Shown here in pieces: positions 10,169 to 50,450 of a stretch of DNA of 64,000 nt (positions within the stretch are counted from its first letter, which is position 1; each line of letters begins with the position of its first letter). Location: the sequence record PQ464595.1; one strand, given 5' to 3'. The translations under genes were made by a program, and so were the position numbers. Below the pieces are notes generated by a model. That model did no database searches, was not told where the DNA came from, and saw only the letters and a list, made by a program, of their open reading frames with translations.

Positions 10169-10229
10169 TAGAATCTATTTTCTGTTTTTTCGATAAAAGT
10201 GAATAGAGTGTGGTTGCTGTTAGATTCTA
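10169..10229 (-). ncRNA. CAGCAA module E1 (free hairpin)
   Basis: TAGAATCTA-ACAGCAA-(variable)-AAACAGAAAA-TAGATTCTA. Confidence 0.75.
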
Positions 10230-11212: not shown

Positions 11213-11713
11213 TTAATTTTCTAAATTAAGTTCTTCATGAATTTCTCGATGACAGTTAGCACAGACTAACATACATTTATCTAATTCACTTTGAATCAGT
11301 TCCCATGAACGAGTAATACCTTCATCTGAAATACCAAAATCTTTTTGATTTGGGTCTTTATGATGGAAGTCTAACGCAGCTATTGATTTGTCATAACCAC
11401 ATCGTTCACATTTACCGCCAAGATATTCAACGGCTTTTATCTTTAATCGTTTACGATGTTCTGTAACTCCTTCAGAATTACATTTCATACATACACGCTT
11501 ACCGTCGGTTCTTTGTGAAAATTCAACATTGTGTTTTAAACATATTGAAGACTCACGTTGAATCATTATATGAGTTTTTAAACTCAAATCTTTGAAATAC
11601 TTCTTCATTGTAGTTGCTGATACATTACAAGTATTAGCAATCTGTTGAATAGTACTTCCACGTGAAATCATTTCCTGAACTACACGATTATCAATTTCAA
11701 GTTTTCTGCTCAT
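11213..11713 (-). CDS. HNH endonuclease (probable free-standing homing endonuclease) with N-terminal HTH
   Basis: CERCGY...LDFHH..P...C..VCANCHREIH motif. Confidence 0.9.
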   Translation of the reverse strand: MSRKLEIDNRVVQEMISRGSTIQQIANTCNVSATTMKKYFKDLSLKTHIMIQRESSICLKHNVEFSQRTDGKRVCMKCNSEGVTEHRKRLKIKAVEYLGGKCERCGYDKSIAALDFHHKDPNQKDFGISDEGITRSWELIQSELDKCMLVCANCHREIHEELNLEN

Positions 11714-11730
11714 AATTCACTTAAAAATAC

Positions 11731-11792
11731 TGGAATCCATTTTGATTTTTCAATTAACAGTTGATTTCATTTATGGTTGCTGCTGGATTCCA
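11731..11792 (-). ncRNA. CAGCAA module E3 (free hairpin)
   Basis: TGGAATCC-AGCAGCAACC...AAAAATCAAAAT-GGATTCCA. Confidence 0.75.
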
Positions 11793-11816: not shown

Positions 11817-11871
11817 TAGAATCTATTTTTGTTTTCTATATCCGAGAAGTTTTAATTGCTGGTAGATTCTA
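11817..11871 (-). ncRNA. CAGCAA module E4 (free hairpin)
   Basis: TAGAATCTA-CCAGCAA...AAAACAAAAA-TAGATTCTA. Confidence 0.75.
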
Positions 11872-11995: not shown

Positions 11996-12110
11996 TGGAA
12001 TTTATTTCGTTTTAGGCGGCTGCTCTCCCAACTGAGCTACAGTACTAGTACTGACAGGACTCGAACCTGCGACATGCTGCGTGATAGAAGTTAGTTGCTG
12101 TTAAATTCCA
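11996..12110 (-). ncRNA. CAGCAA module E5 carrying a circularly permuted tRNA domain
   Basis: Order: stem, ACAGCAA, anticodon 3' half, T arm (GCAGG TTCGAGT CCTGT), closed acceptor CAGTACT-AGTACTG, D arm (GCTC AGTTGGGA GAGC), stem. Confidence 0.8.
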
Positions 12111-12392: not shown

Positions 12393-12529
12393 AAGAATTC
12401 ATCGTTTATTGGATAGCCGTGTCTACCTATTTCACCATCACTATTCAGTACTGACATAGTTCGTAGGACTCGAACCTACACGCCATAAGGCCGCTATTTG
12501 GGTTAACATTTAGTTGCTGTTGAATTCTT
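12393..12529 (-). ncRNA. CAGCAA module E6 carrying a circularly permuted class-II (Leu-like) tRNA domain
   Basis: Variable arm, T arm GTAGG TTCGAGT CCTAC, acceptor closed by a TCAGTACTGA hairpin, D arm GTG AAATAGGTAGA CAC, GCTAT/ATAGC stem. Confidence 0.78.
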
Positions 12530-13560: not shown

Positions 13561-13578
13561 TATCTCTCAATTAAATGC

Positions 13579-13636
13579 TGGAATCCACAAGGTCAAAGTA
13601 AAAGTTTGATTTTTGTGTGGTTGCTGGAGGATTCCA
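13579..13636 (-). ncRNA. CAGCAA module E7 (free hairpin)
   Basis: TGGAATCC-TCCAGCAACCACAC...GGATTCCA. Confidence 0.75.
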
Positions 13637-14152: not shown

Positions 14153-14212
14153 TAGAATCTATAATCTTTGTTTTCACCAATTGAATAAGAGTATGTTTGC
14201 TGTTAGATTCTA
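14153..14212 (-). ncRNA. CAGCAA module E8 (free hairpin)
   Basis: TAGAATCTA-ACAGCAA-ACATAC...AAAACAAAGATTA-TAGATTCTA. Confidence 0.75.
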
Positions 14213-14336
14213 TGCGAGAAAGGTTGGACTCGAACCAACGACCAGGCCATTAAAAGTGGATGAAGTATGGTTGCTGAGAAATTACATTACAGTAATTTTT
14301 GGGTTCTACCTGCTCTACCAACTGAGCTACTTTCTC
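14213..14336 (-). tRNA. tRNA-Lys(TTT) interrupted by a 49-nt CAGCAA insert (14260-14308) in the anticodon stem
   Basis: Deleting the insert gives the perfect arm GGCCA-CTTTTAA-TGGCC; acceptor, D and T arms are intact. Confidence 0.75.
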
Positions 14337-14344
14337 ATAAATTT

Positions 14345-14448
14345 TGGGGCAAGGAATGGAGTTGAACCATTTCCAGGATCAGTGGCATCTCCAGTGTTTT
14401 ATCACTCAGAAGACAATGCCCATTGGGTAATTAAGTTCCTCAAGCCTC
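14345..14448 (-). ncRNA. tRNA-like RNA: T arm plus acceptor-like stem and a long hairpin in place of the anticodon arm
   Basis: AATGG TTCAACT CCATT; GGCA/TGCC, TCTTC/GGAGA, AGTG ATAAAA CACT. Confidence 0.5.
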
Positions 14449-14647: not shown

Positions 14648-14802
14648 GGATTCTCATTAATTGAGCAACTATCTAGCACGGCTCAATATAACTAATTACT
14701 ATCTCCCTAGTTACCAGGTGGACACGAAGGGAGTTTTACGTCCGAGTATCCAATCTCATTTATGATTGATTTTTAAGATTTTATGTGTTGCTGTCAGAAT
14801 CC
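14648..14802 (-). ncRNA. CAGCAA module E10 with a ~135-nt structured payload
   Basis: GGATTCT-GACAGCAA...AGAATCC; inner CTCCCT/AGGGAG, GGAC/GTCC (pseudoknot), ATTGAGC/GCTCAAT. Confidence 0.65.
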
Positions 14803-14831: not shown

Positions 14832-14937
14832 AAGAATCGTTGTTTTCTGTCCCCACAACCAGTGGTAAATCGGAATTGAACCGAAGGTGTTTTTCGCCAA
14901 ATGAAATATAAAGAGTTATGTTTGCTGGACGATTCTT
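14832..14937 (-). ncRNA. CAGCAA module E11 with T arm and closed acceptor-like hairpin
   Basis: AAGAATCGT-CCAGCAA...TCGG TTCAATT CCGA...CCAC/GTGG...AAAACA-ACGATTCTT. Confidence 0.7.
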
Positions 14938-14938
14938 T

Positions 14939-15012
14939 TAGCGTTCCCAACGGGGTTCGAACCCGTGTTGCCTGAGTGAAAGTCAGGTATCCTACCGCTA
15001 GATGATGGGAAC
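14939..15012 (-). tRNA. tRNA-Glu(TTC)
   Basis: Cloverleaf, loop CTTTCAC, G73; 3' CTA. Confidence 0.95.
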
Positions 15013-15195: not shown

Positions 15196-15311
15196 GAAAT
15201 CTTTGTTTTTCTGGCCCCAAGCACAGCCTACATAGCAACGTGGCTGCTGCGGATTCGAACCGCACCGTTTTTTTCGCATAAAAAATATTGTTTTGTTTGC
15301 TGTAAGATTTC
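15196..15311 (-). ncRNA. CAGCAA module E12 with T arm, closed acceptor and mini D arm
   Basis: GAAATCTT-ACAGCAA...TGCGG TTCGAAT CCGCA-GCAGCC/GGCTGT-GC TTGGG GC-AAAAACA-AAGATTTC. Confidence 0.72.
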
Positions 15312-15378: not shown

Positions 15379-15500
15379 GGAATCTCGTTTTATCCAGCAC
15401 CAAGCTCCCACTATTTGAATAAGGCAGATGTTCGTGGGTGGGGAATTGAACCCCGTCGTTTTGTTTTCATCAAAAGGTTTAATTTTTGCTGTAAGATTCC
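15379..15500 (-). ncRNA. CAGCAA module E13 with T arm, closed acceptor and mini D arm
   Basis: GGAATCT-TACAGCAA...GGGG TTCAATT CCCC-CCCAC/GTGGG-AGC TTGGT GCT-AAAACG-AGATTCC. Confidence 0.72.
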
Positions 15501-22285: not shown

Positions 22286-22404
22286 TGCGGTGAGTACAGG
22301 AATCGAACCTGTGACTTCGGCGTGAAAGGCAATTGTTTGATTGCTGTTAGATTCAGTACTGGAATCCATTTTTTTACGCTATTTTACCACTAAACTAACT
22401 CACC
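22286..22404 (-). tRNA. tRNA-Glu(TTC) interrupted by a 46-nt CAGCAA insert (22331-22376) at 29/30
   Basis: Deleting the insert gives GCGGC-CTTTCAC-GCCGA; acceptor GGTGAGT/ACTCACC, G73. Confidence 0.75.
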
Positions 22405-22410
22405 AGATTT

Positions 22411-22767
22411 TTAAGTGCGATTAGGACGTGAGTTTTTGATCAACTCAACACCCGCAGCAGTACAACGTTCAATTTGACCGTCATACAATTTCTCTACAAC
22501 GTCTTTATCAGAACTATGTAGATATATTTGTTTCAGTTTCGGGAAAGCATTACGCTTCAGACGGTGAGTTACCATCATCAGCAAATCAGCCCCCGTATGG
22601 GTACGATCACCCAGGAAGTTATCAAAGTGAAGTACTTCAATTTCTTCACTATTAGCGAAGATGAAGTTCTTTGCTTCCCACCACTCTTTCAGCCAAACAA
22701 TACCTTCTGATTGTTCAGCCGTTAAATGATTTTCAGGATTGCGAATATCGTCTACGTAAATTTTCAT
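22411..22767 (-). CDS. cyclic-phosphate-processing receiver (cREC)-like domain protein
   Basis: IYVDDIRNP...LHFDNFLG..TGADL...IYLHS pattern. Confidence 0.7.
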   Translation of the reverse strand: MKIYVDDIRNPENHLTAEQSEGIVWLKEWWEAKNFIFANSEEIEVLHFDNFLGDRTHTGADLLMMVTHRLKRNAFPKLKQIYLHSSDKDVVEKLYDGQIERCTAAGVELIKNSRPNRT

Positions 22768-23159
22768 TAGTAGTTATTCTCCTGACTATTGTTAATCAGT
22801 TCAACCCCAGCTTTAGCCAGTTCTTCCTTATAGTCTTCGATCATTTCTTCGACCATATCAGAATCAGAGGAATGAAGATAAATCTGTTTCAGATTTTTCC
22901 ATTCTTCTTTATCTCCCCACATACAATCACCAGCAACCATAAAGAACAAGTCTTTACCAGTTAGCGTTGGTTCATCCATGTAGTGATCGAAGTGAATCAC
23001 TTCCAGGGTGGCAGCATTTTCGATCAGGAAACGTTTTGCTTCCCACCATTCTTTGATCCAAACAATACCTTCGGCTTGTTCCGCATTCAGATAACGTGCT
23101 GGATCACGAATGTCGTCAATGTAAACTTTCGTGTTAGACATATTAACGCCCACCCTCAA
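22767..23159 (-). CDS. cyclic-phosphate-processing receiver (cREC)-like domain protein, tandem paralog
   Basis: VYIDDIRDP...IHFDHYM..TGKDL...IYLHS. Confidence 0.7.
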   Translation of the reverse strand: MRVGVNMSNTKVYIDDIRDPARYLNAEQAEGIVWIKEWWEAKRFLIENAATLEVIHFDHYMDEPTLTGKDLFFMVAGDCMWGDKEEWKNLKQIYLHSSDSDMVEEMIEDYKEELAKAGVELINNSQENNY

Positions 23160-23627: not shown

Positions 23628-23707
23628 TAGTGCGAGGGGATGGACTTGAACCACCGACACGGAGTTACCCTAAGATAATCTTGCTCTACCATCTGAGCTA
23701 CCCTCGC
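23628..23707 (-). tRNA. tRNA-like gene with aberrant anticodon arm (anticodon not assignable)
   Basis: Perfect acceptor GCGAGGG/CCCTCGC, D and T arms; anticodon/variable region about 5 nt too long with irregular pairing (AGATTATCTTAGGGTAACTCCG). Confidence 0.6.
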
Positions 23708-24244: not shown

Positions 24245-24359
24245 TGTGGAGAGGGGTGGATTCGAACCACCGTACCGTTCTTATGAATGAAATTTATGGA
24301 TGCCGTAAGATTCCATCTGGAATCGCTTTTCGTGTCCTGGGCCGCTAGACGACCTCTCC
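24245..24359 (-). tRNA. tRNA-CAT-like gene interrupted by a 39-nt CAGCAA-family insert (24292-24330; core CGGCAT)
   Basis: Deleting the insert gives CGTTC-ATTCATAA-GAACG (8-nt loop); the insert has a GATTCC AGAT GGAATC stem. Confidence 0.6.
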
Positions 24360-30607: not shown

Positions 30608-30718
30608 GGTGCTAAGAACAGGATTCGAACCTGTAAGGAAACCTCGCGGTACTTCCCACGTCCTATTGTCGCTTTCGCTATCGTCAGACGCTACGTTTAC
30701 CAATTCCGTCATCTCAGC
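30608..30718 (-). ncRNA. class-II tRNA scaffold with a 24-nt expanded anticodon loop
   Basis: GCTGAGA/TCTTAGC, Leu-like D arm, GCGTC/GACGT stem, loop contains GC-GAAA-GC, long variable hairpin, T arm. Confidence 0.7.
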
Positions 30719-30881: not shown

Positions 30882-30956
30882 TGTGGCTCATACCAGATTC
30901 GAACTGGTGTGGACAGAGATTTAGAGTCTCCCGCTACGCCTCTCAGCTAATGAGCC
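30882..30956 (-). tRNA. amber suppressor tRNA (anticodon CTA)
   Basis: Cloverleaf GGCTCAT/ATGAGCC, arm GGAGA-CTCTAAA-TCTCT, A73. Confidence 0.9.
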
Positions 30957-42051: not shown

Positions 42052-42873
42052 TCATAAGGACAACATAGCCTCAACGATTGATGGAATATCACATTCGTAG
42101 AATCCAGCACAATTGATATTATTAACTTCCAGTACTTTATACCCTTCAGACGTTTCAGCAAAATCCATTACAAAGGCATCTGCTGGAACCCATTTTTTAC
42201 ATAGTTCTTCAGCTTTATCAACTATATACTTAGGTGCAGTTTGTGCAAGACGAACTTCACCATGTAATTTATAAAGTGACCAAGCTACGACTTCACCTTT
42301 TACAATAAAGAGACGATATTCAGAAATAATATCTTTACATGAAGAAACCATTATTTCAAAATCATCAGATACAGTTTCTTTAAATTGGTTAATAGCATAT
42401 TCAAAATTATCACGTTCAATAACAGTAGCTATCATCTTTTTAGTATCATGTACTGGACGAATAAAGACTTTATCAGTCCAGATAGGATTTAACCTTTCTG
42501 TAATATTGGATACAGTACCGAAAGATGCATCCCCATTAAGAAAATTAGGTCTTCCCCAATATGTAGTCATTTGTTCAAATATGTTGAAGTTTTCATTTAT
42601 AAATCCACCAGGAGTATAACCTTCTTCAACAAGTTGATTAGCTAATGCATAACTTCCAAATGACATAGTGGGTACTGATTTATCAAAGTACTTTTCATAT
42701 GAAGCATCAGTATAATCAGTAACATCTTCAGGAACAAATATATTCAAAAATGGAACTGGTTTAACTGAAGTGTGAGATATGTTATTCTGTACCATATATT
42801 CTTTCATGATACGAAAACCATCTTCATTGAAATACTTATCCATTATTAGAAAGTGCATGTATATCCTTAGCAA
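42052..42873 (-). CDS. ATP-grasp domain protein (DUF4343/R2K-like)
   Basis: VFIRP..D.K, EYR.F, FVMD, VLEVN.IN.AGFY. Confidence 0.85.
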   Translation of the reverse strand: MLRIYMHFLIMDKYFNEDGFRIMKEYMVQNNISHTSVKPVPFLNIFVPEDVTDYTDASYEKYFDKSVPTMSFGSYALANQLVEEGYTPGGFINENFNIFEQMTTYWGRPNFLNGDASFGTVSNITERLNPIWTDKVFIRPVHDTKKMIATVIERDNFEYAINQFKETVSDDFEIMVSSCKDIISEYRLFIVKGEVVAWSLYKLHGEVRLAQTAPKYIVDKAEELCKKWVPADAFVMDFAETSEGYKVLEVNNINCAGFYECDIPSIVEAMLSL

Positions 42874-43172: not shown

Positions 43173-43294
43173 TAGTCGGGAATTGTGGACTCGAACCACA
43201 TCTCACGGCTCCCTATGCAATTGTATTGGTTGCTGTGAAATTCCATTACAAGAATTTATGTTATACGGTGTGCTAACCCTTACACTAATTCCCG
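43173..43294 (-). tRNA. tRNA-Pro(AGG)-like gene interrupted by a 47-nt CAGCAA insert (43219-43265) at 29/30
   Basis: Deleting the insert gives CCGGC-ATAGGGA-GCCGT; C1-G72, A73 and G37 fit Pro identity. Confidence 0.7.
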
Positions 43295-47084: not shown

Positions 47085-48278
47085 TTACTTACCGTCGAAC
47101 ATGGTTTCAATCACGTCCGGTGACTCAGCTTTGCTGAACTTCACGTGTAGACGGTGTTCACCGAATTCACGGTTGATAACAATACTAGTACTGTTAACAA
47201 TGGTGTCAGACTTGCTGAACTCCAGGTTCACGAAGTACTGAATCTCTTTGATTGGTGTTTCAACTTCTTCACCATCAACATCGACTTCAGTTCCTTCTTC
47301 TTCGTCATCCCAATCCATGTCGTATACACGAGCATCAATTGCCTTCATCTCTTTCTCAAGAGTACCTTCATCTGCGAAGATGTAAGCACGAAGGGTATCG
47401 TACTTCGCCATGAATGAGAAGCTGGTCATACGATTCATTGCTTTATCGTCGAACTTCACTTCTTTACCATCAATGGTGAACTCAGATACTACGAAGGAGT
47501 TACCTTCACGAGCTTCTACTTCAACGTTCAGTTCACGGAAGGTTTCAGTGAAAGTCTGAGTTGGGTAGCGGTTCAGTTCTTCGATCAGACACTGGATCAT
47601 ATCGAAGCTGATAGTTTCTGCCACTTCCCACAGTGTTTCGAACTGAGGAATGTAGCTCTTGTTAACCAGCTTGTCGTTCAGCAGTTCAATCATAACCTGC
47701 TTAGCCAGTTTCTTGTACTCGAAGTGGTAGAAGATACGGCTTGGACGGTTACGAAGGAACTCGGAAACGTTGCGGTTGTTCGAGGTCAGGATGTACAACT
47801 TGTTGTAAGAACCAGTACCATCAAGCAGGGTCAGGATCGCTTCCTGATGCTCACGTTCTGCGTAAACCTTCTCGAATTCATCAAACAGAATCAGAGCTTT
47901 GTCTTCAATAGCTTTGATGAAGTTAATGAAACCACCATCAGTATAACAGTTCTGAATGATAATGGTTGGAATACCCATTTCAGCCAGAGCAAGACTTACA
48001 TCTTTAGCAAGCTGAGTTTTACCAGCACCTTTAGTACCGCTCAGAAGCACACCAGTATTCTTACCTTCACGTTCCAGGTAAGTGTTGATCACTTTGTTGT
48101 TACGTGAAGCCATTTCACCGTAAACTTTCGCAGGGCGAGTAAACGGAGTGGACTTCAGTAGGTAGTACTGCCCATTTTGTGGATTATATTCCACGGTATA
48201 AGTACCCGCAGGAATAGTTTCAATTTTGTTACCGAATTCACGAGCAATCGTGATAATATCACCGCTTTGATTGTACAT
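47085..48278 (-). CDS. AAA+ ATPase
   Basis: Walker A GTKGAGKT, Walker B LILFDEFEK, sensor TSN, RPSR. Confidence 0.9.
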   Translation of the reverse strand: MYNQSGDIITIAREFGNKIETIPAGTYTVEYNPQNGQYYLLKSTPFTRPAKVYGEMASRNNKVINTYLEREGKNTGVLLSGTKGAGKTQLAKDVSLALAEMGIPTIIIQNCYTDGGFINFIKAIEDKALILFDEFEKVYAEREHQEAILTLLDGTGSYNKLYILTSNNRNVSEFLRNRPSRIFYHFEYKKLAKQVMIELLNDKLVNKSYIPQFETLWEVAETISFDMIQCLIEELNRYPTQTFTETFRELNVEVEAREGNSFVVSEFTIDGKEVKFDDKAMNRMTSFSFMAKYDTLRAYIFADEGTLEKEMKAIDARVYDMDWDDEEEGTEVDVDGEEVETPIKEIQYFVNLEFSKSDTIVNSTSIVINREFGEHRLHVKFSKAESPDVIETMFDGK

Positions 48279-49631: not shown

Positions 49632-50450
49632 TTAACCTTCATAGTAGGCTTGAACAGTACTAAACAACTTCATGGTATCCATGTGGTAAAGTCCAGAACA
49701 GTTCCAGCAATTATATTCAACAATCTTAATGCCATTTGGAGTTTCAGCCAAATCCATAGTATAGAACTGAGCAGGAATATACAGTTTAGCGTATTCATGT
49801 GAAGCAGCTAATACTTGTTCGGGAATTTCAGAACTATAGATAGTACTGTTATTCCGGCGATACTGCGAACCGCTAATAGGTTCACCATTCTGACAGATGA
49901 AACGATATTCAGCGTCAATCTGAACAACATCGTTTATCAGTACTGTTTCTTCCTGATAATTCTCACGATGGAAGTTCGATTCGATGAAGTATTTCAGTAC
50001 TTCACCAGCTTCCATAACTCCAGCAGTAAATGCTTTCAGGTCGGAGCTTGGTTTTACAAATTTATCAACCCCAAAGGATGCGAACAAATCACGGTCATCT
50101 TTGAGATTCAAAAACTCAGGTGTTCCGTTCAACAATGGTAATCCTAAAGTTGAATAAAACGCCTGATCGAAATTACGAATGTCATAAGACAAGCCTTGAC
50201 GCATTTTGGCAATCAGTTCAGGTGGCAGATTATCAGAAGTACCTGACTCCAGGATTTCTACCATCTTAGTACCGCCACGCATGATGAATGTATCATTCAC
50301 ATCCAAATCATCTAAGCCAGTAATAGTCTTAGTGAAAGGAATAACACCGAATGGTACAATCTCATAGCCTAACTTCTGGAGAGGAATGAATTCATCTTCA
50401 AGAGCTTGGTACATACGAGCAGTATCTTGTACTAACCATTTAATAGCCAT
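49632..50450 (-). CDS. ATP-grasp domain protein (DUF4343/R2K-like), paralog of 42052-42873
   Basis: FVKPSSDLK.F, EYRF, YTMD, IVEYN..NCSGLY. Confidence 0.85.
   Translation of the reverse strand: MAIKWLVQDTARMYQALEDEFIPLQKLGYEIVPFGVIPFTKTITGLDDLDVNDTFIMRGGTKMVEILESGTSDNLPPELIAKMRQGLSYDIRNFDQAFYSTLGLPLLNGTPEFLNLKDDRDLFASFGVDKFVKPSSDLKAFTAGVMEAGEVLKYFIESNFHRENYQEETVLINDVVQIDAEYRFICQNGEPISGSQYRRNNSTIYSSEIPEQVLAASHEYAKLYIPAQFYTMDLAETPNGIKIVEYNCWNCSGLYHMDTMKLFSTVQAYYEG

What the first reader, a model, noticed from the sequence alone, without database searches (positions are those of the whole stretch)
22286..22404. tRNA-Glu(UUC) with a 46-nt insert at 29/30 whose loop reproduces the flank of the free modules
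Seen: insert TAAAAAAAT-GGATTC-CAGTACT-GAATCT-AACAGCAA-TCAAACAATT. GGATTCCAGTA is exactly what follows free modules E3 and E5, which links the free and inserted forms by circular permutation. Excision restores a Glu anticodon arm. An uninterrupted tRNA-Glu also exists at 14939.
Basis: partly seen in the sequence, partly recalled or inferred. Interest (0 to 1): 0.8.

Follow-up and report, generated by a model that had tools for sequence, protein, structure and literature searches.

The report
Hairpin insert splitting jumbo-phage tRNA genes
A tRNA gene of a 366-kb Erwinia phage carries a conserved 46-base hairpin insert in its anticodon stem, one member of an undescribed phage-only family of such inserts that looks like a new kind of tRNA intron, though no RNA data yet show that it is removed.

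Summary
Window 22288-22404 (minus strand; Erwinia phage Kaldavass) is a full-length Rfam tRNA match (47.7 bits) that ARAGORN misses. Deleting 46 nt (22331-22376) in silico yields a 71-nt tRNA-Glu(UUC).

The insert is not a one-off. Its build recurs at the same place, after nt 28-29 of the anticodon stem: UA start, helix H (GAUUC/GAAUC type), then a CAGCAA box. It occurs in three more tRNA-like genes of the window, in every Mimasvirus/Eneladusvirus ortholog examined, and in unrelated large uncultivated phages. It was found in none of 185,579 bacterial and archaeal genomes.

In 17 distinct cases, removal gives a canonical anticodon arm: 84 of 85 pairs standard, U33 always present, nine anticodons. 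Stems change by compensating substitutions, and no intron-less allele was found.

The same module also occurs circularly permuted. Ten 'open' copies at 10-15.5 kb have matched arms that enclose nothing or a permuted tRNA-like body.

Kaldavass encodes T4-type PNK and Rnl1. Two predicted cyclic-phosphate-processing (cREC) genes abut the tRNA.

Best reading (0.45): a protein-dependent tRNA intron, cut out by an unidentified nuclease and resealed by phage enzymes. Splicing itself is untested. It is not a BHB intron, a group I intron or a Lak-phage intron.

The parts
22288..22404 (-). Interrupted tRNA-Glu(UUC) gene, 117 nt (the finding)
   Evidence: Rfam tRNA 47.7 bits over the full model. ARAGORN calls tRNA-Glu only after in-silico excision.
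22377..22404 (-). 5' exon: acceptor 5' strand, D arm, A26, G27 C28 G29
   Evidence: Direct reading; family parse.
22331..22376 (-). 46-nt insert (putative intron): UA + A-rich tail, helix H, box, 3' tail
22362..22367 (-). Helix H, 5' arm GGATTC
   Evidence: Pairs with 22349-22354. H covaries across 23 inserts: 94.2% of cells paired, 13 double-change cells against 3.6 in shuffles, 0/500.
22355..22361 (-). Loop CAGTACT, which contains the genome-wide AGTACT word
22349..22354 (-). Helix H, 3' arm GAATCT
22341..22346 (-). Conserved single-stranded box CAGCAA (C-R-GCA-W across the family)
   Evidence: Near-invariant columns in alignment A3. In the window the motif occurs 13 times on the minus strand and never on the plus strand.
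22288..22330 (-). 3' exon: G30 C31, loop CTTTCAC (anticodon 22324-22326), GCCGA, variable region, T arm, acceptor 3' strand, G73
22411..22767 (-). cREC-domain gene ending 6 nt upstream of the tRNA (predicted 2',3'-cyclic-phosphate processing)
   Evidence: Pfam PF20274, 46.3 bits against cut-off 27. The function is predicted only (PMC7824862). The gene pair plus tRNA is conserved in XbC2, CBB, GAP32, SNUABM_44 and fHe-Yen9-04.
22767..23141 (-). Second cREC paralog (51% identical to the first)
   Evidence: Pfam PF20274, 36.9 bits; paralogy.
14215..14336 (-). Second interrupted tRNA, Lys(UUU); 49-nt insert at 14260-14308, position 28/29; H = AAATTAC/GTAATTT
   Evidence: Rfam 46.1 bits. ARAGORN calls tRNA-Lys after excision.
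24247..24359 (-). Third interrupted tRNA (Glu-type body); 39-nt insert at 24292-24330; box CGGCAT; 8-nt anticodon loop after excision
   Evidence: The CBB, GAP32 and SNUABM_44 orthologs have a 7-nt Glu loop.
43177..43293 (-). Fourth tRNA-like gene with the module (H = AAATTC/GAATTT); atypical loop ATAGGGA; no Rfam tRNA match here even at E<=5
   Evidence: ortholog CBB tRNA2.
11998..12108 (-). Open module enclosing a permuted tRNA-like body (T arm, closed acceptor hairpin, D arm)
   Evidence: Rfam YrlA partial hit, 41.9 bits, below the cut-off of 69. The rotated sequence is called a tRNA with a 46-nt intron.
12395..12527 (-). Open module (GAATTC/GAATTC) enclosing a permuted type-II tRNA-like body
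   Evidence: ortholog in L223 with compensating changes in the variable arm.
14649..14801 (-). Open module (GATTCT/AGAATC) with 133-nt cargo
14834..14935 (-). Open module (GAATCG/CGATTC) with T-arm-like cargo, starting 6 nt after tRNA-Glu
   Evidence: conserved in L058, L143, L223 and L224.
15380..15499 (-). Open module with tRNA-like cargo, behind its own TGAAACG/TATAAT promoter
   Evidence: conserved in L058, L074, L143, L153, L223 and L224. The promoter type is described for CBB.
10171..10227 (-). Open 'empty' module (31-38 nt between the arms). The other four are at 11733-11790, 11819-11869, 13581-13634 and 14155-14210
14941..15012 (-). Uninterrupted tRNA-Glu(UUC); only 42 of 72 positions match the exons of the interrupted copy
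23631..23707 (-). Degenerate tRNA (ARAGORN 'ttag'); ortholog of an insert-bearing tRNA in a related contig (L143:9916-10039), with the module deleted

Best explanation
The 46-nt segment is a protein-dependent tRNA intron of a previously undescribed, phage-specific class.

Proposed mechanism: the tRNA is transcribed with its neighbours as part of an early polycistronic RNA. The anticodon stem forms across the insertion, so the insert projects from the 5' strand as an extra arm. Helix H plus the single-stranded CAGCAA box serves as the handle for an endoribonuclease, phage or host, not identified. That enzyme cuts at both feet of the arm: after G28/G29 (consensus CG|UA) and just before the lower anticodon stem. 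The resulting nick is healed and sealed by the phage's own enzymes (cREC and/or PNK-phosphatase, then Rnl1), giving a 71-nt tRNA-Glu(UUC).

The same handle in permuted ('open') form marks tRNA-like RNAs and intergenic spots that the same machinery would process.

Shown here: the anatomy, the family, its conservation and covariation, its restriction to phages, and the presence of the healing and sealing genes.

Inferred: that cutting and rejoining happen at all, the chemistry of the ends, and which nuclease acts.
For: 1. In-silico excision yields tRNAs that ARAGORN accepts (Glu, Lys), although it missed the unspliced genes.

2. Seventeen distinct family members give canonical anticodon arms after excision. 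84 of 85 pairs are standard, with 3-4 pair types at positions 29-41, 30-40 and 31-39. U33 is present in 17/17 and R37 in 15/17. Nine anticodons occur. The stem that spans the insert is therefore under selection.

3. Orthologs in five phages with about 75-86% identical flanks keep the insert, and 7 of 23 tRNA/H pairs carry compensating double changes.

4. H covaries across 23 inserts (0/500 shuffles). H has a wholly different sequence in the Lys copy (AAATTAC/GTAATTT) but sits in the same place.

5. The same architecture occurs in unrelated uncultivated phages, on contigs of 185-361 kb, for Gln, Asp, Pro and other tRNAs. None of the 11 pattern matches in 596 Gb of cellular genomes lies in a tRNA.

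6. No intron-less allele was found in IMG/VR.

7. Kaldavass encodes PNK/phosphatase and Rnl1 with the tRNA-specific C-terminal domain. Two cREC genes sit 6 nt upstream of the tRNA. cREC homologs sit next to Rnl1 in phage FENT2 and inside the tRNA cluster of phage Stubb.
Against: - There are no RNA data, so nothing shows removal.
- No endonuclease was identified. Only about 135 kb of the 366-kb genome was inspected.
- Protein-spliced tRNA introns have no precedent in bacteria or phages.
- The 3' junction has no conserved sequence, and tail lengths vary (7-13 nt).
- Permuted copies with closed acceptor hairpins cannot become chargeable tRNAs. The module therefore also works in non-decoding RNAs, which fits a retained functional arm at least as well.
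- Some members have aberrant loops: 24247 (8 nt), 43177 (ATAGGGA), CBB tRNA15 (10 nt).
- This particular copy is the weakest member: G27.A43 and only 2 bp below the insert.
- PNK, Rnl1 and cREC are equally explained by tRNA repair against host anticodon nucleases.
Confidence: 0.45

Rival explanations
1. The arm is retained. These are tRNA-shaped non-coding RNAs in which helix H plus the box is a permanent protein-binding handle. They would be Y-RNA-like ribonucleoproteins, or decoys that soak up host anticodon nucleases or other tRNA-targeting defences. The interrupted and permuted genes would then be two topologies of one RNA shape.
For: Permuted copies keep the module although they have a closed acceptor hairpin. 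One gives a partial YrlA match of 41.9 bits. H and the box are conserved in sequence as well as structure. The anticodon at the orthologous locus switches quickly: UUU, UUC, GUC, GAU. The affected tRNAs are mostly Lys, Glu, Gln, Asp and Tyr. By general knowledge these are classic anticodon-nuclease targets, which would suit an arms race.
Against: The interrupted genes keep intact acceptor stems and discriminators, and in CBB, GAP32 and BF an encoded CCA, which a decoy does not need. The YrlA match is far below the cut-off of 69. No Ro60/TROVE gene was seen, though most of the genome was not inspected.
Confidence: 0.25
2. It is a processing signal without rejoining. The module is a cleavage site that punctuates polycistronic early transcripts. 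Interrupted tRNAs would end up as two non-covalently held halves or be degraded.
For: Open modules sit immediately after tRNAs (4-17 nt) and 20-35 nt before start codons. Each copy has its own matched arm pair, as expected for cis pairing on a long transcript.
Against: It does not explain why the anticodon stem keeps pairing across the insert or why 7-nt loops are preserved. A 6-9-bp helix is short for RNase III (general knowledge).
Confidence: 0.1
3. It is a selfish DNA element (MITE-like) that inserted into tRNA genes, and the interrupted copies are pseudogenes.
For: It is a repeated module with inverted arms. An HNH endonuclease gene (11213-11713) follows a free copy. Some copies are clearly decaying (23631-23707; CBB tRNA15). 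Intact isoacceptors exist.
Against: There are no target-site duplications. No empty sites were found in any relative. The tRNA stems show long-term retention with compensating changes. The motif is on the transcribed strand only, 13 to 0. No associated ORF family exists.
Confidence: 0.08
4. It is a self-cleaving or self-splicing small ribozyme.
For: The box is conserved and lies next to a helix. Healing and sealing enzymes suit ribozyme-type 2',3'-cyclic phosphate ends.
Against: No Rfam ribozyme or group I match appears even at E<=1-5. Only one conserved helix exists. Two cuts would be needed from 46 nt.
Confidence: 0.05

Closest known systems
Archaeal/eukaryal protein-spliced tRNA introns (bulge-helix-bulge type, including non-canonical positions)
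   Same: A short intervening sequence (tens of nt) in or near the anticodon arm. Removal restores the cloverleaf. It would require an endonuclease plus an RNA ligase. The same motif could act on introns and on permuted genes.
   Different: There is no BHB: both junctions lie on one strand at one helical position. The position is 28/29 (also 29/30 and 31/32) rather than 37/38. The insert carries its own sequence-conserved hairpin and CAGCAA box. The host is a phage of bacteria, which by general knowledge lack EndA.
Bacterial and phage group I self-splicing introns in tRNA genes
   Same: They interrupt bacterial-type tRNA genes in the anticodon region.
   Different: Those are at least about 200 nt with a P1-P9 core, sit in the anticodon loop, and match Rfam Intron_gpI. 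Here the insert is 39-51 nt with a single helix and no Rfam match.
Circularly permuted tRNA genes of the red alga Cyanidioschyzon merolae
   Same: The 3' half lies upstream of the 5' half. The permuted genes relate to intron-bearing genes by circular permutation, and the leader and trailer pair with each other.
   Different: The terminal helix here is H plus the box, not a BHB. In 11998-12108 the acceptor strands abut with no spacer or discriminator, so a chargeable tRNA is unlikely.
YrlA / bacterial Y RNA-like tRNA mimics (Rfam RF02553)
   Same: T arm, closed acceptor-like hairpin and D arm, with the RNA ends forming a stem in place of the anticodon arm.
   Different: The match scores 41.9 bits against a cut-off of 69 and covers only the tRNA-like core. 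The terminal stem sequence is unrelated. No Ro60 gene was found in the inspected parts.
'Enigmatic' tRNA introns of Lak megaphages (PMC6784885)
   Same: Unexplained inserts in tRNA genes of huge phages, conserved between genomes, with no Rfam hit.
   Different: Lak inserts are 79-93 nt, are placed in the anticodon loop, and some contain a tRNA-like fold. None carries the CAGCAA box.
T4 tRNA repair pathway (PNK + Rnl1)
   Same: Kaldavass has both enzymes, including the tRNA-specific Rnl1 C-terminal domain. They could seal the excision nick.
   Different: In T4 they repair damage by a host anticodon nuclease. A routine splicing role has never been shown.

Membership tests
BHB-type protein-spliced tRNA intron | Removal of the insert restores a canonical tRNA | tested here: met
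   ARAGORN calls tRNA-Glu and tRNA-Lys after in-silico excision. Across 17 arms, 84/85 pairs are standard.
BHB-type protein-spliced tRNA intron | Two 3-nt bulges separated by a 4-bp helix at the exon-intron junctions | tested here: not met
   The consensus fold of 23 inserts gives only the internal helix H. Both junctions abut on the same strand of the anticodon stem. The single-sequence folds of the Kaldavass and CBB genes predict no helix pairing the insert's two ends with each other or with the exons as a BHB would need.
BHB-type protein-spliced tRNA intron | EndA/Sen-type splicing endonuclease available | not tested
   Only about 135 kb of the 366-kb genome was looked at, and none was seen there.
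Group I self-splicing tRNA intron | Conserved P1-P9 catalytic core (Rfam Intron_gpI), about 200 nt or more | tested here: not met
   The insert is 46 nt. There is no Rfam hit other than tRNA at E<=1 or window-wide at E<=5.
Permuted tRNA gene (C. merolae type) | 3' half precedes 5' half, and rotation restores a tRNA | tested here: met
   Rotated 11998-12108 is called a 119-nt tRNA with a 46-nt intron.
Permuted tRNA gene (C. merolae type) | Spacer and discriminator between the 3' and 5' ends that allow mature termini | tested here: not met
   In 11998-12108 the acceptor strands CAGTACT|AGTACTG abut directly. 12395-12527 has an 11-nt loop but only 5 acceptor pairs.
YrlA (Y RNA-like) | Reaches the Rfam gathering score over the full model | tested here: not met
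   41.9 bits against 69, model positions 24-84 of 114 only. 20 bits at 14283-14395.
YrlA (Y RNA-like) | Partner Ro60/Rsr (TROVE) protein encoded nearby or in the genome | not tested
   The whole proteome was not scanned.
MITE / IS-derived insertion | Target-site duplication, and empty sites in relatives | tested here: not met
   No duplicated flank was seen by inspection. No intron-less allele exists in IMG/VR. All orthologs carry the insert.
Lak megaphage tRNA introns | Same sequence family and position | tested here: not met
   The Lak intron table has no CAGCAA. Those inserts are 79-93 nt in the anticodon loop.
T4-type tRNA heal-and-seal pathway | PNK/phosphatase and Rnl1 with tRNA-binding C-terminal domain encoded by the phage | tested here: met
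   HAD_PNKP 157.8 bits; T4_Rnl1_C 71.6 bits; RNA_lig_T4_1 63.2 bits.

The most novel reading that the evidence does not exclude
Large phages carry their own RNA cut-and-rejoin system. A portable handle (helix H plus the CAGCAA box) directs excision of an arm from the anticodon stem of phage tRNAs. In permuted loci the same handle directs processing, possibly circularisation, of tRNA-like RNAs. T4-type PNK, Rnl1 and cREC would then act as routine splicing enzymes rather than only as repair enzymes. This would be a third class of tRNA intron and the first protein-dependent one outside archaea and eukaryotes. It could gate tRNA supply so that only phage-equipped cells mature these tRNAs.
Probability: 0.3. 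Interest if true: 0.9.

Novelty: new variant of a known kind. Interest (0 to 1): 0.8.

Why it matters
Bacteria and their viruses are thought to have only self-splicing (group I) tRNA introns. A short, protein-dependent intron with its own recognition handle would overturn that view.

It would give the widespread phage RNA ligase, PNK and cREC genes a constitutive substrate. That would make their biological role directly testable.

It would explain the 'tRNA-OTHER', 'Undet' and 'Pseudo' calls that litter jumbo-phage annotations: four genes in this window, five in CBB. It would also correct phage tRNA repertoires.

The fast anticodon switching at one orthologous locus (UUU, UUC, GUC, GAU) and the permuted tRNA-like genes point to an evolvable tRNA toolkit, possibly engaged in conflicts with host tRNA-targeting defences.

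Even if the arm is retained, this is a new family of structured phage RNAs.

Tried and rejected
- **Known RNA families.** Rfam at gathering and at permissive thresholds found nothing except tRNA, plus weak YrlA matches. There was no ribozyme, group I, ToxI or tmRNA hit.
- **BHB motif.** Not present.
- **Pairing between the insert's two tails.** No consistent complementarity across 23 inserts (by inspection).
- **CRISPR-repeat or ToxI mimicry.** No resemblance, judged from memory only and not tested beyond Rfam.
- **Promoter.** The CBB paper's promoter motifs (RpoD-like, TGAAACG/TATA, ATAAATA) are different sequences. The module lies downstream of one such promoter at 15499.
- **Mobile cassette with an ORF.** All-against-all BLAST of window ORFs shows no ORF family tied to the modules.
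- **Intron-less alleles or orthologs.** Three IMG/VR pattern scans found none. Synteny through the flanking cREC gene found the insert in every Mimasvirus/Eneladusvirus genome examined and no tRNA at that spot in Eowynvirus.
- **Link to Lak megaphage introns.** Rejected.
- **The CAGTACT loop as a module-specific signal.** Rejected. AGTACT is 10-fold enriched genome-wide in this phage group only.
- **The annotated 'RNA ligase' CDS0549.** It is an Acb1-like 2H phosphoesterase, not a ligase.
- **Shared candidate nuclease.** Comparing Kaldavass ORFs with the distant insert-bearing contigs found only an AAA ATPase and small ORFs in common.
- **Literature.** Seven full-text searches found no description of this element.

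Full report
**Source and setting**

The window is 100% identical to Erwinia phage Kaldavass (PQ464595.1, bases 62001-126000). Kaldavass is a 366-kb Rak2-like jumbo phage placed with Mimasvirus (PMC11780129). The window covers the early tRNA region. ARAGORN finds 26 tRNA genes, all on the minus strand, interspersed with small ORFs.

**Check of the observation**

The minus strand of 22288-22404 reads as a complete tRNA with 46 extra bases at 22331-22376. The extra bases sit in the 5' strand of the anticodon stem.
- Rfam's tRNA model matches the locus end to end (47.7 bits, cut-off 29) with about 47 nt inserted.
- ARAGORN misses the locus. GenBank calls it tRNA-OTHER.
- With the 46 nt removed in a script, ARAGORN calls a 71-nt tRNA-Glu(ttc).
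- The insert is UAAAAAAAU, helix H (GGAUUC / CAGUACU loop / GAAUCU), AA, the CAGCAA box, then UCAAACAAUU.
- The string GGATTCCAGTA recurs exactly at 11728-11738 and with one mismatch at 13576-13586. In both places it closes a free module.
- The intact tRNA-Glu is at 14941-15012. It shares only 42 of 72 positions with the exons of the interrupted copy, so the interrupted copy is not a recent duplicate.

**The insert belongs to a family**

Three more tRNA-like genes in the window carry the same module.
- 14215-14336 is Lys(UUU), with a 49-nt insert at position 28/29.
- 24247-24359 has a Glu-type body and a 39-nt insert.
- 43177-43293 has an atypical anticodon loop.

CBB has five such long tRNAs.

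The ortholog of the 22288 gene keeps the insert in XbC2, CBB, GAP32, SNUABM_44/BF and fHe-Yen9-04. It also keeps it in several metagenomic relatives. Across five orthologs, 7 of 23 predicted pairs show compensating double changes.

Pattern scans of IMG/VR and JGI metagenomes recovered the same architecture in unrelated large uncultivated phages, on contigs of 185, 194 and 361 kb. These have no close cultured relative. The affected tRNAs there are Gln, Asp, Pro and others.

The same pattern gave 11 matches in one genome for each of 185,579 bacterial and archaeal species. None of them lies in a tRNA. The element is phage-specific as far as this pattern can see.

**Rules of the family**
- The 5' exon ends at C27 G28, and the insert starts with UA.
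- A 5-11-nt tail follows, often purine-rich.
- Helix H comes next, with an invariant AUU/AAU core, covarying flanks and a 4-8-nt loop.
- Then come two or three bases, the box C-R-GCA-W, and a 7-13-nt tail.
- The 3' exon starts with the lower anticodon stem.
- A Tyr/Leu subgroup has the insert at 31/32, with the arms of H swapped.
- The Kaldavass/XbC2 Glu gene is the outlier: GCG|...|GC, formally 29/30, with G27.A43.

On the 23-insert alignment, H is 94.2% paired. It has 13 double-change cells against 3.6 in shuffles (0/500), and the signal collapses when partners are slid.

For 17 distinct genes, excision gives 84 of 85 standard pairs in the anticodon stem, with 3-4 pair types at each of the three lower positions. 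U33 is present in 17/17 and R37 in 15/17. Nine different anticodons occur.

No intron-less allele was found.

Together these results show functional RNAs whose anticodon stem must pair across the insert. They do not fit decaying pseudogenes.

**The circular-permutation claim**

The motif G-W-W-T-Y-N NN CAGCAA occurs 13 times on the minus strand and never on the plus strand.
- Ten of the 13 copies have the exact complement of their own six-base arm 20-165 nt downstream. A shuffled-arm control gives 5.5%.
- The arm pairs differ between copies and always match: GAATCC/GGATTC, GAATCT/AGATTC, GAATTT/AAATTC, GAATCG/CGATTC, GAATTC/GAATTC, GATTCT/AGAATC.
- Five open copies enclose only 31-38 nt. That stretch reads as a 3' tail joined to a 5' tail.
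- Five enclose 82-133 nt. In at least two of these, the cargo is a T arm, a closed acceptor-like hairpin and a D arm.
- 12019-12077 gives a partial YrlA match (41.9 bits, below the cut-off of 69).
- Rotating 11998-12108 and closing H produces a 119-nt sequence that ARAGORN calls a tRNA with a 46-nt intron.

The CAGTACT loop is a different matter. AGTACT is 10-fold over-represented throughout the window (208 against 20.8; CAGTACTG 43 against 0.8). The same excess appears in CBB, GAP32 and BF-like sequences, but not in the distant insert-bearing phages, whose loops are GTGA, GGTA or GAAA.

**Enzymes**

The two paralogous genes immediately upstream of the tRNA (22411-22767 and 22767-23141) match Pfam cREC_REC above the cut-off (46.3 and 36.9 bits).
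- cREC is a domain predicted, not shown, to open 2',3'-cyclic phosphate ends. It is reported to be linked to RNA ligases (PMC7824862).
- Homologs lie directly after Rnl1 in phage FENT2 and inside the tRNA cluster of the T5-like phage Stubb.
- The linkage is therefore to tRNA and RNA-end metabolism in general, not to interrupted tRNAs specifically.

Elsewhere, Kaldavass encodes a T4-type PNK/phosphatase and an Rnl1 with the tRNA-binding C-terminal domain. It also encodes Thg1 and TyrRS.

The ligation half of a splicing pathway is thus present. No candidate endonuclease was identified.

**Interpretation**

I rank a protein-dependent intron first (0.45). Only decoding or charging explains the joint preservation of the acceptor end, the L-shape elements, a 7-nt loop with U33/R37, and a stem that pairs across the insert.

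A retained functional arm (a tRNA-like ribonucleoprotein or a decoy) comes second (0.25). The permuted copies show that the module also serves RNAs that cannot be charged. The anticodon at one orthologous locus also changes quickly: UUU, UUC, GUC, GAU.

The remaining readings are less likely: cleavage without rejoining (0.1), a selfish DNA element (0.08) and a ribozyme (0.05).

**Comparison with known systems**

The element fails the defining tests of BHB introns, group I introns, YrlA and Lak-phage introns (see the membership table). It resembles the Cyanidioschyzon pairing of intron-bearing and permuted tRNA genes in topology only.

Seven full-text literature searches found no description of it. 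The CBB paper only counts 33 tRNAs, of which '31 appear functional'. The Kaldavass paper does not discuss these tRNA genes.

**Verdict**

This is a real, conserved, phage-specific RNA element of a new type. Removal of the insert is plausible but unproven.

Noticed in passing
whole window (e.g. 22355-22361, 12041-12052, 12447): The palindrome AGTACT occurs 208 times against 20.8 expected, and CAGTACTG 43 times against 0.8. It lies inside genes and between them. The same excess is seen in CBB, GAP32 and BF-like sequences, but not in other phages carrying the tRNA insert. It is not among the modified motifs reported for Kaldavass (GATC, CCWGG, TGCAT).
   Followed up: partly
22288-22404 and its orthologs (L122, L048, L074, L226, L143, L058): The anticodon at this one orthologous locus differs between related phages: UUU (CBB, GAP32, BF), UUC (Kaldavass, XbC2), GUC (a 371-kb contig) and GAU (fHe-Yen9-04). 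The lower stem changes in step each time.
   Followed up: partly
15380-15499 and about 15230-15310: Two tandem small-RNA-like loci each sit behind a TGAAACG-N17-TATAAT promoter. Each starts with the GAATCT-NN-CAGCAA motif and contains a T-arm-like hairpin. The first is highly conserved across Mimasvirus/Eneladusvirus-like contigs and has an extra 8-bp long-range complement (ATAAGGCA/TGCCTTAT).
   Followed up: partly
30610-30718: A 109-nt tRNA-like gene (Rfam 38.4 bits; annotated tRNA-Arg) without the module. It has a 22-nt 'anticodon loop' containing a small hairpin, and it overlaps two annotated small CDS. This is a different kind of insertion. The ortholog is CBB tRNA7.
   Followed up: no
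30883-30956; 23631-23707; 24247-24359: An amber-suppressor-type tRNA (anticodon CUA), plus two tRNAs with 8-nt anticodon loops (ARAGORN 'ttag' and, after excision, 'tcat'). A relative of the last one has a 7-nt loop with anticodon UCA, an opal-suppressor type.
   Followed up: no
42052-42858 and 49632-50450: Two paralogous R2K-clade ATP-grasp proteins (Pfam R2K_2/R2K_3, about 64 bits) lie inside the tRNA region, next to an AAA ATPase (47085-48278). That ATPase is also conserved next to interrupted tRNAs on a distant 361-kb contig.
   Followed up: no
record 324291-324737 (outside the window; L228:28291-28737): The gene annotated 'RNA ligase' is an Acb1-like 2H phosphoesterase (an anti-CBASS family), not a ligase.
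   Followed up: yes
11213-11713: An HNH endonuclease gene with an N-terminal HTH lies directly after two empty modules. CBB likewise has an HNH gene at the end of a tRNA gene.
   Followed up: no
L227:1556-1600 (Klebsiella phage Eowyn): Downstream of the cREC homolog there is a CCCGGCAGCAA box-like sequence followed by a hairpin, but no tRNA. This may be a remnant or a variant of the module.
   Followed up: no
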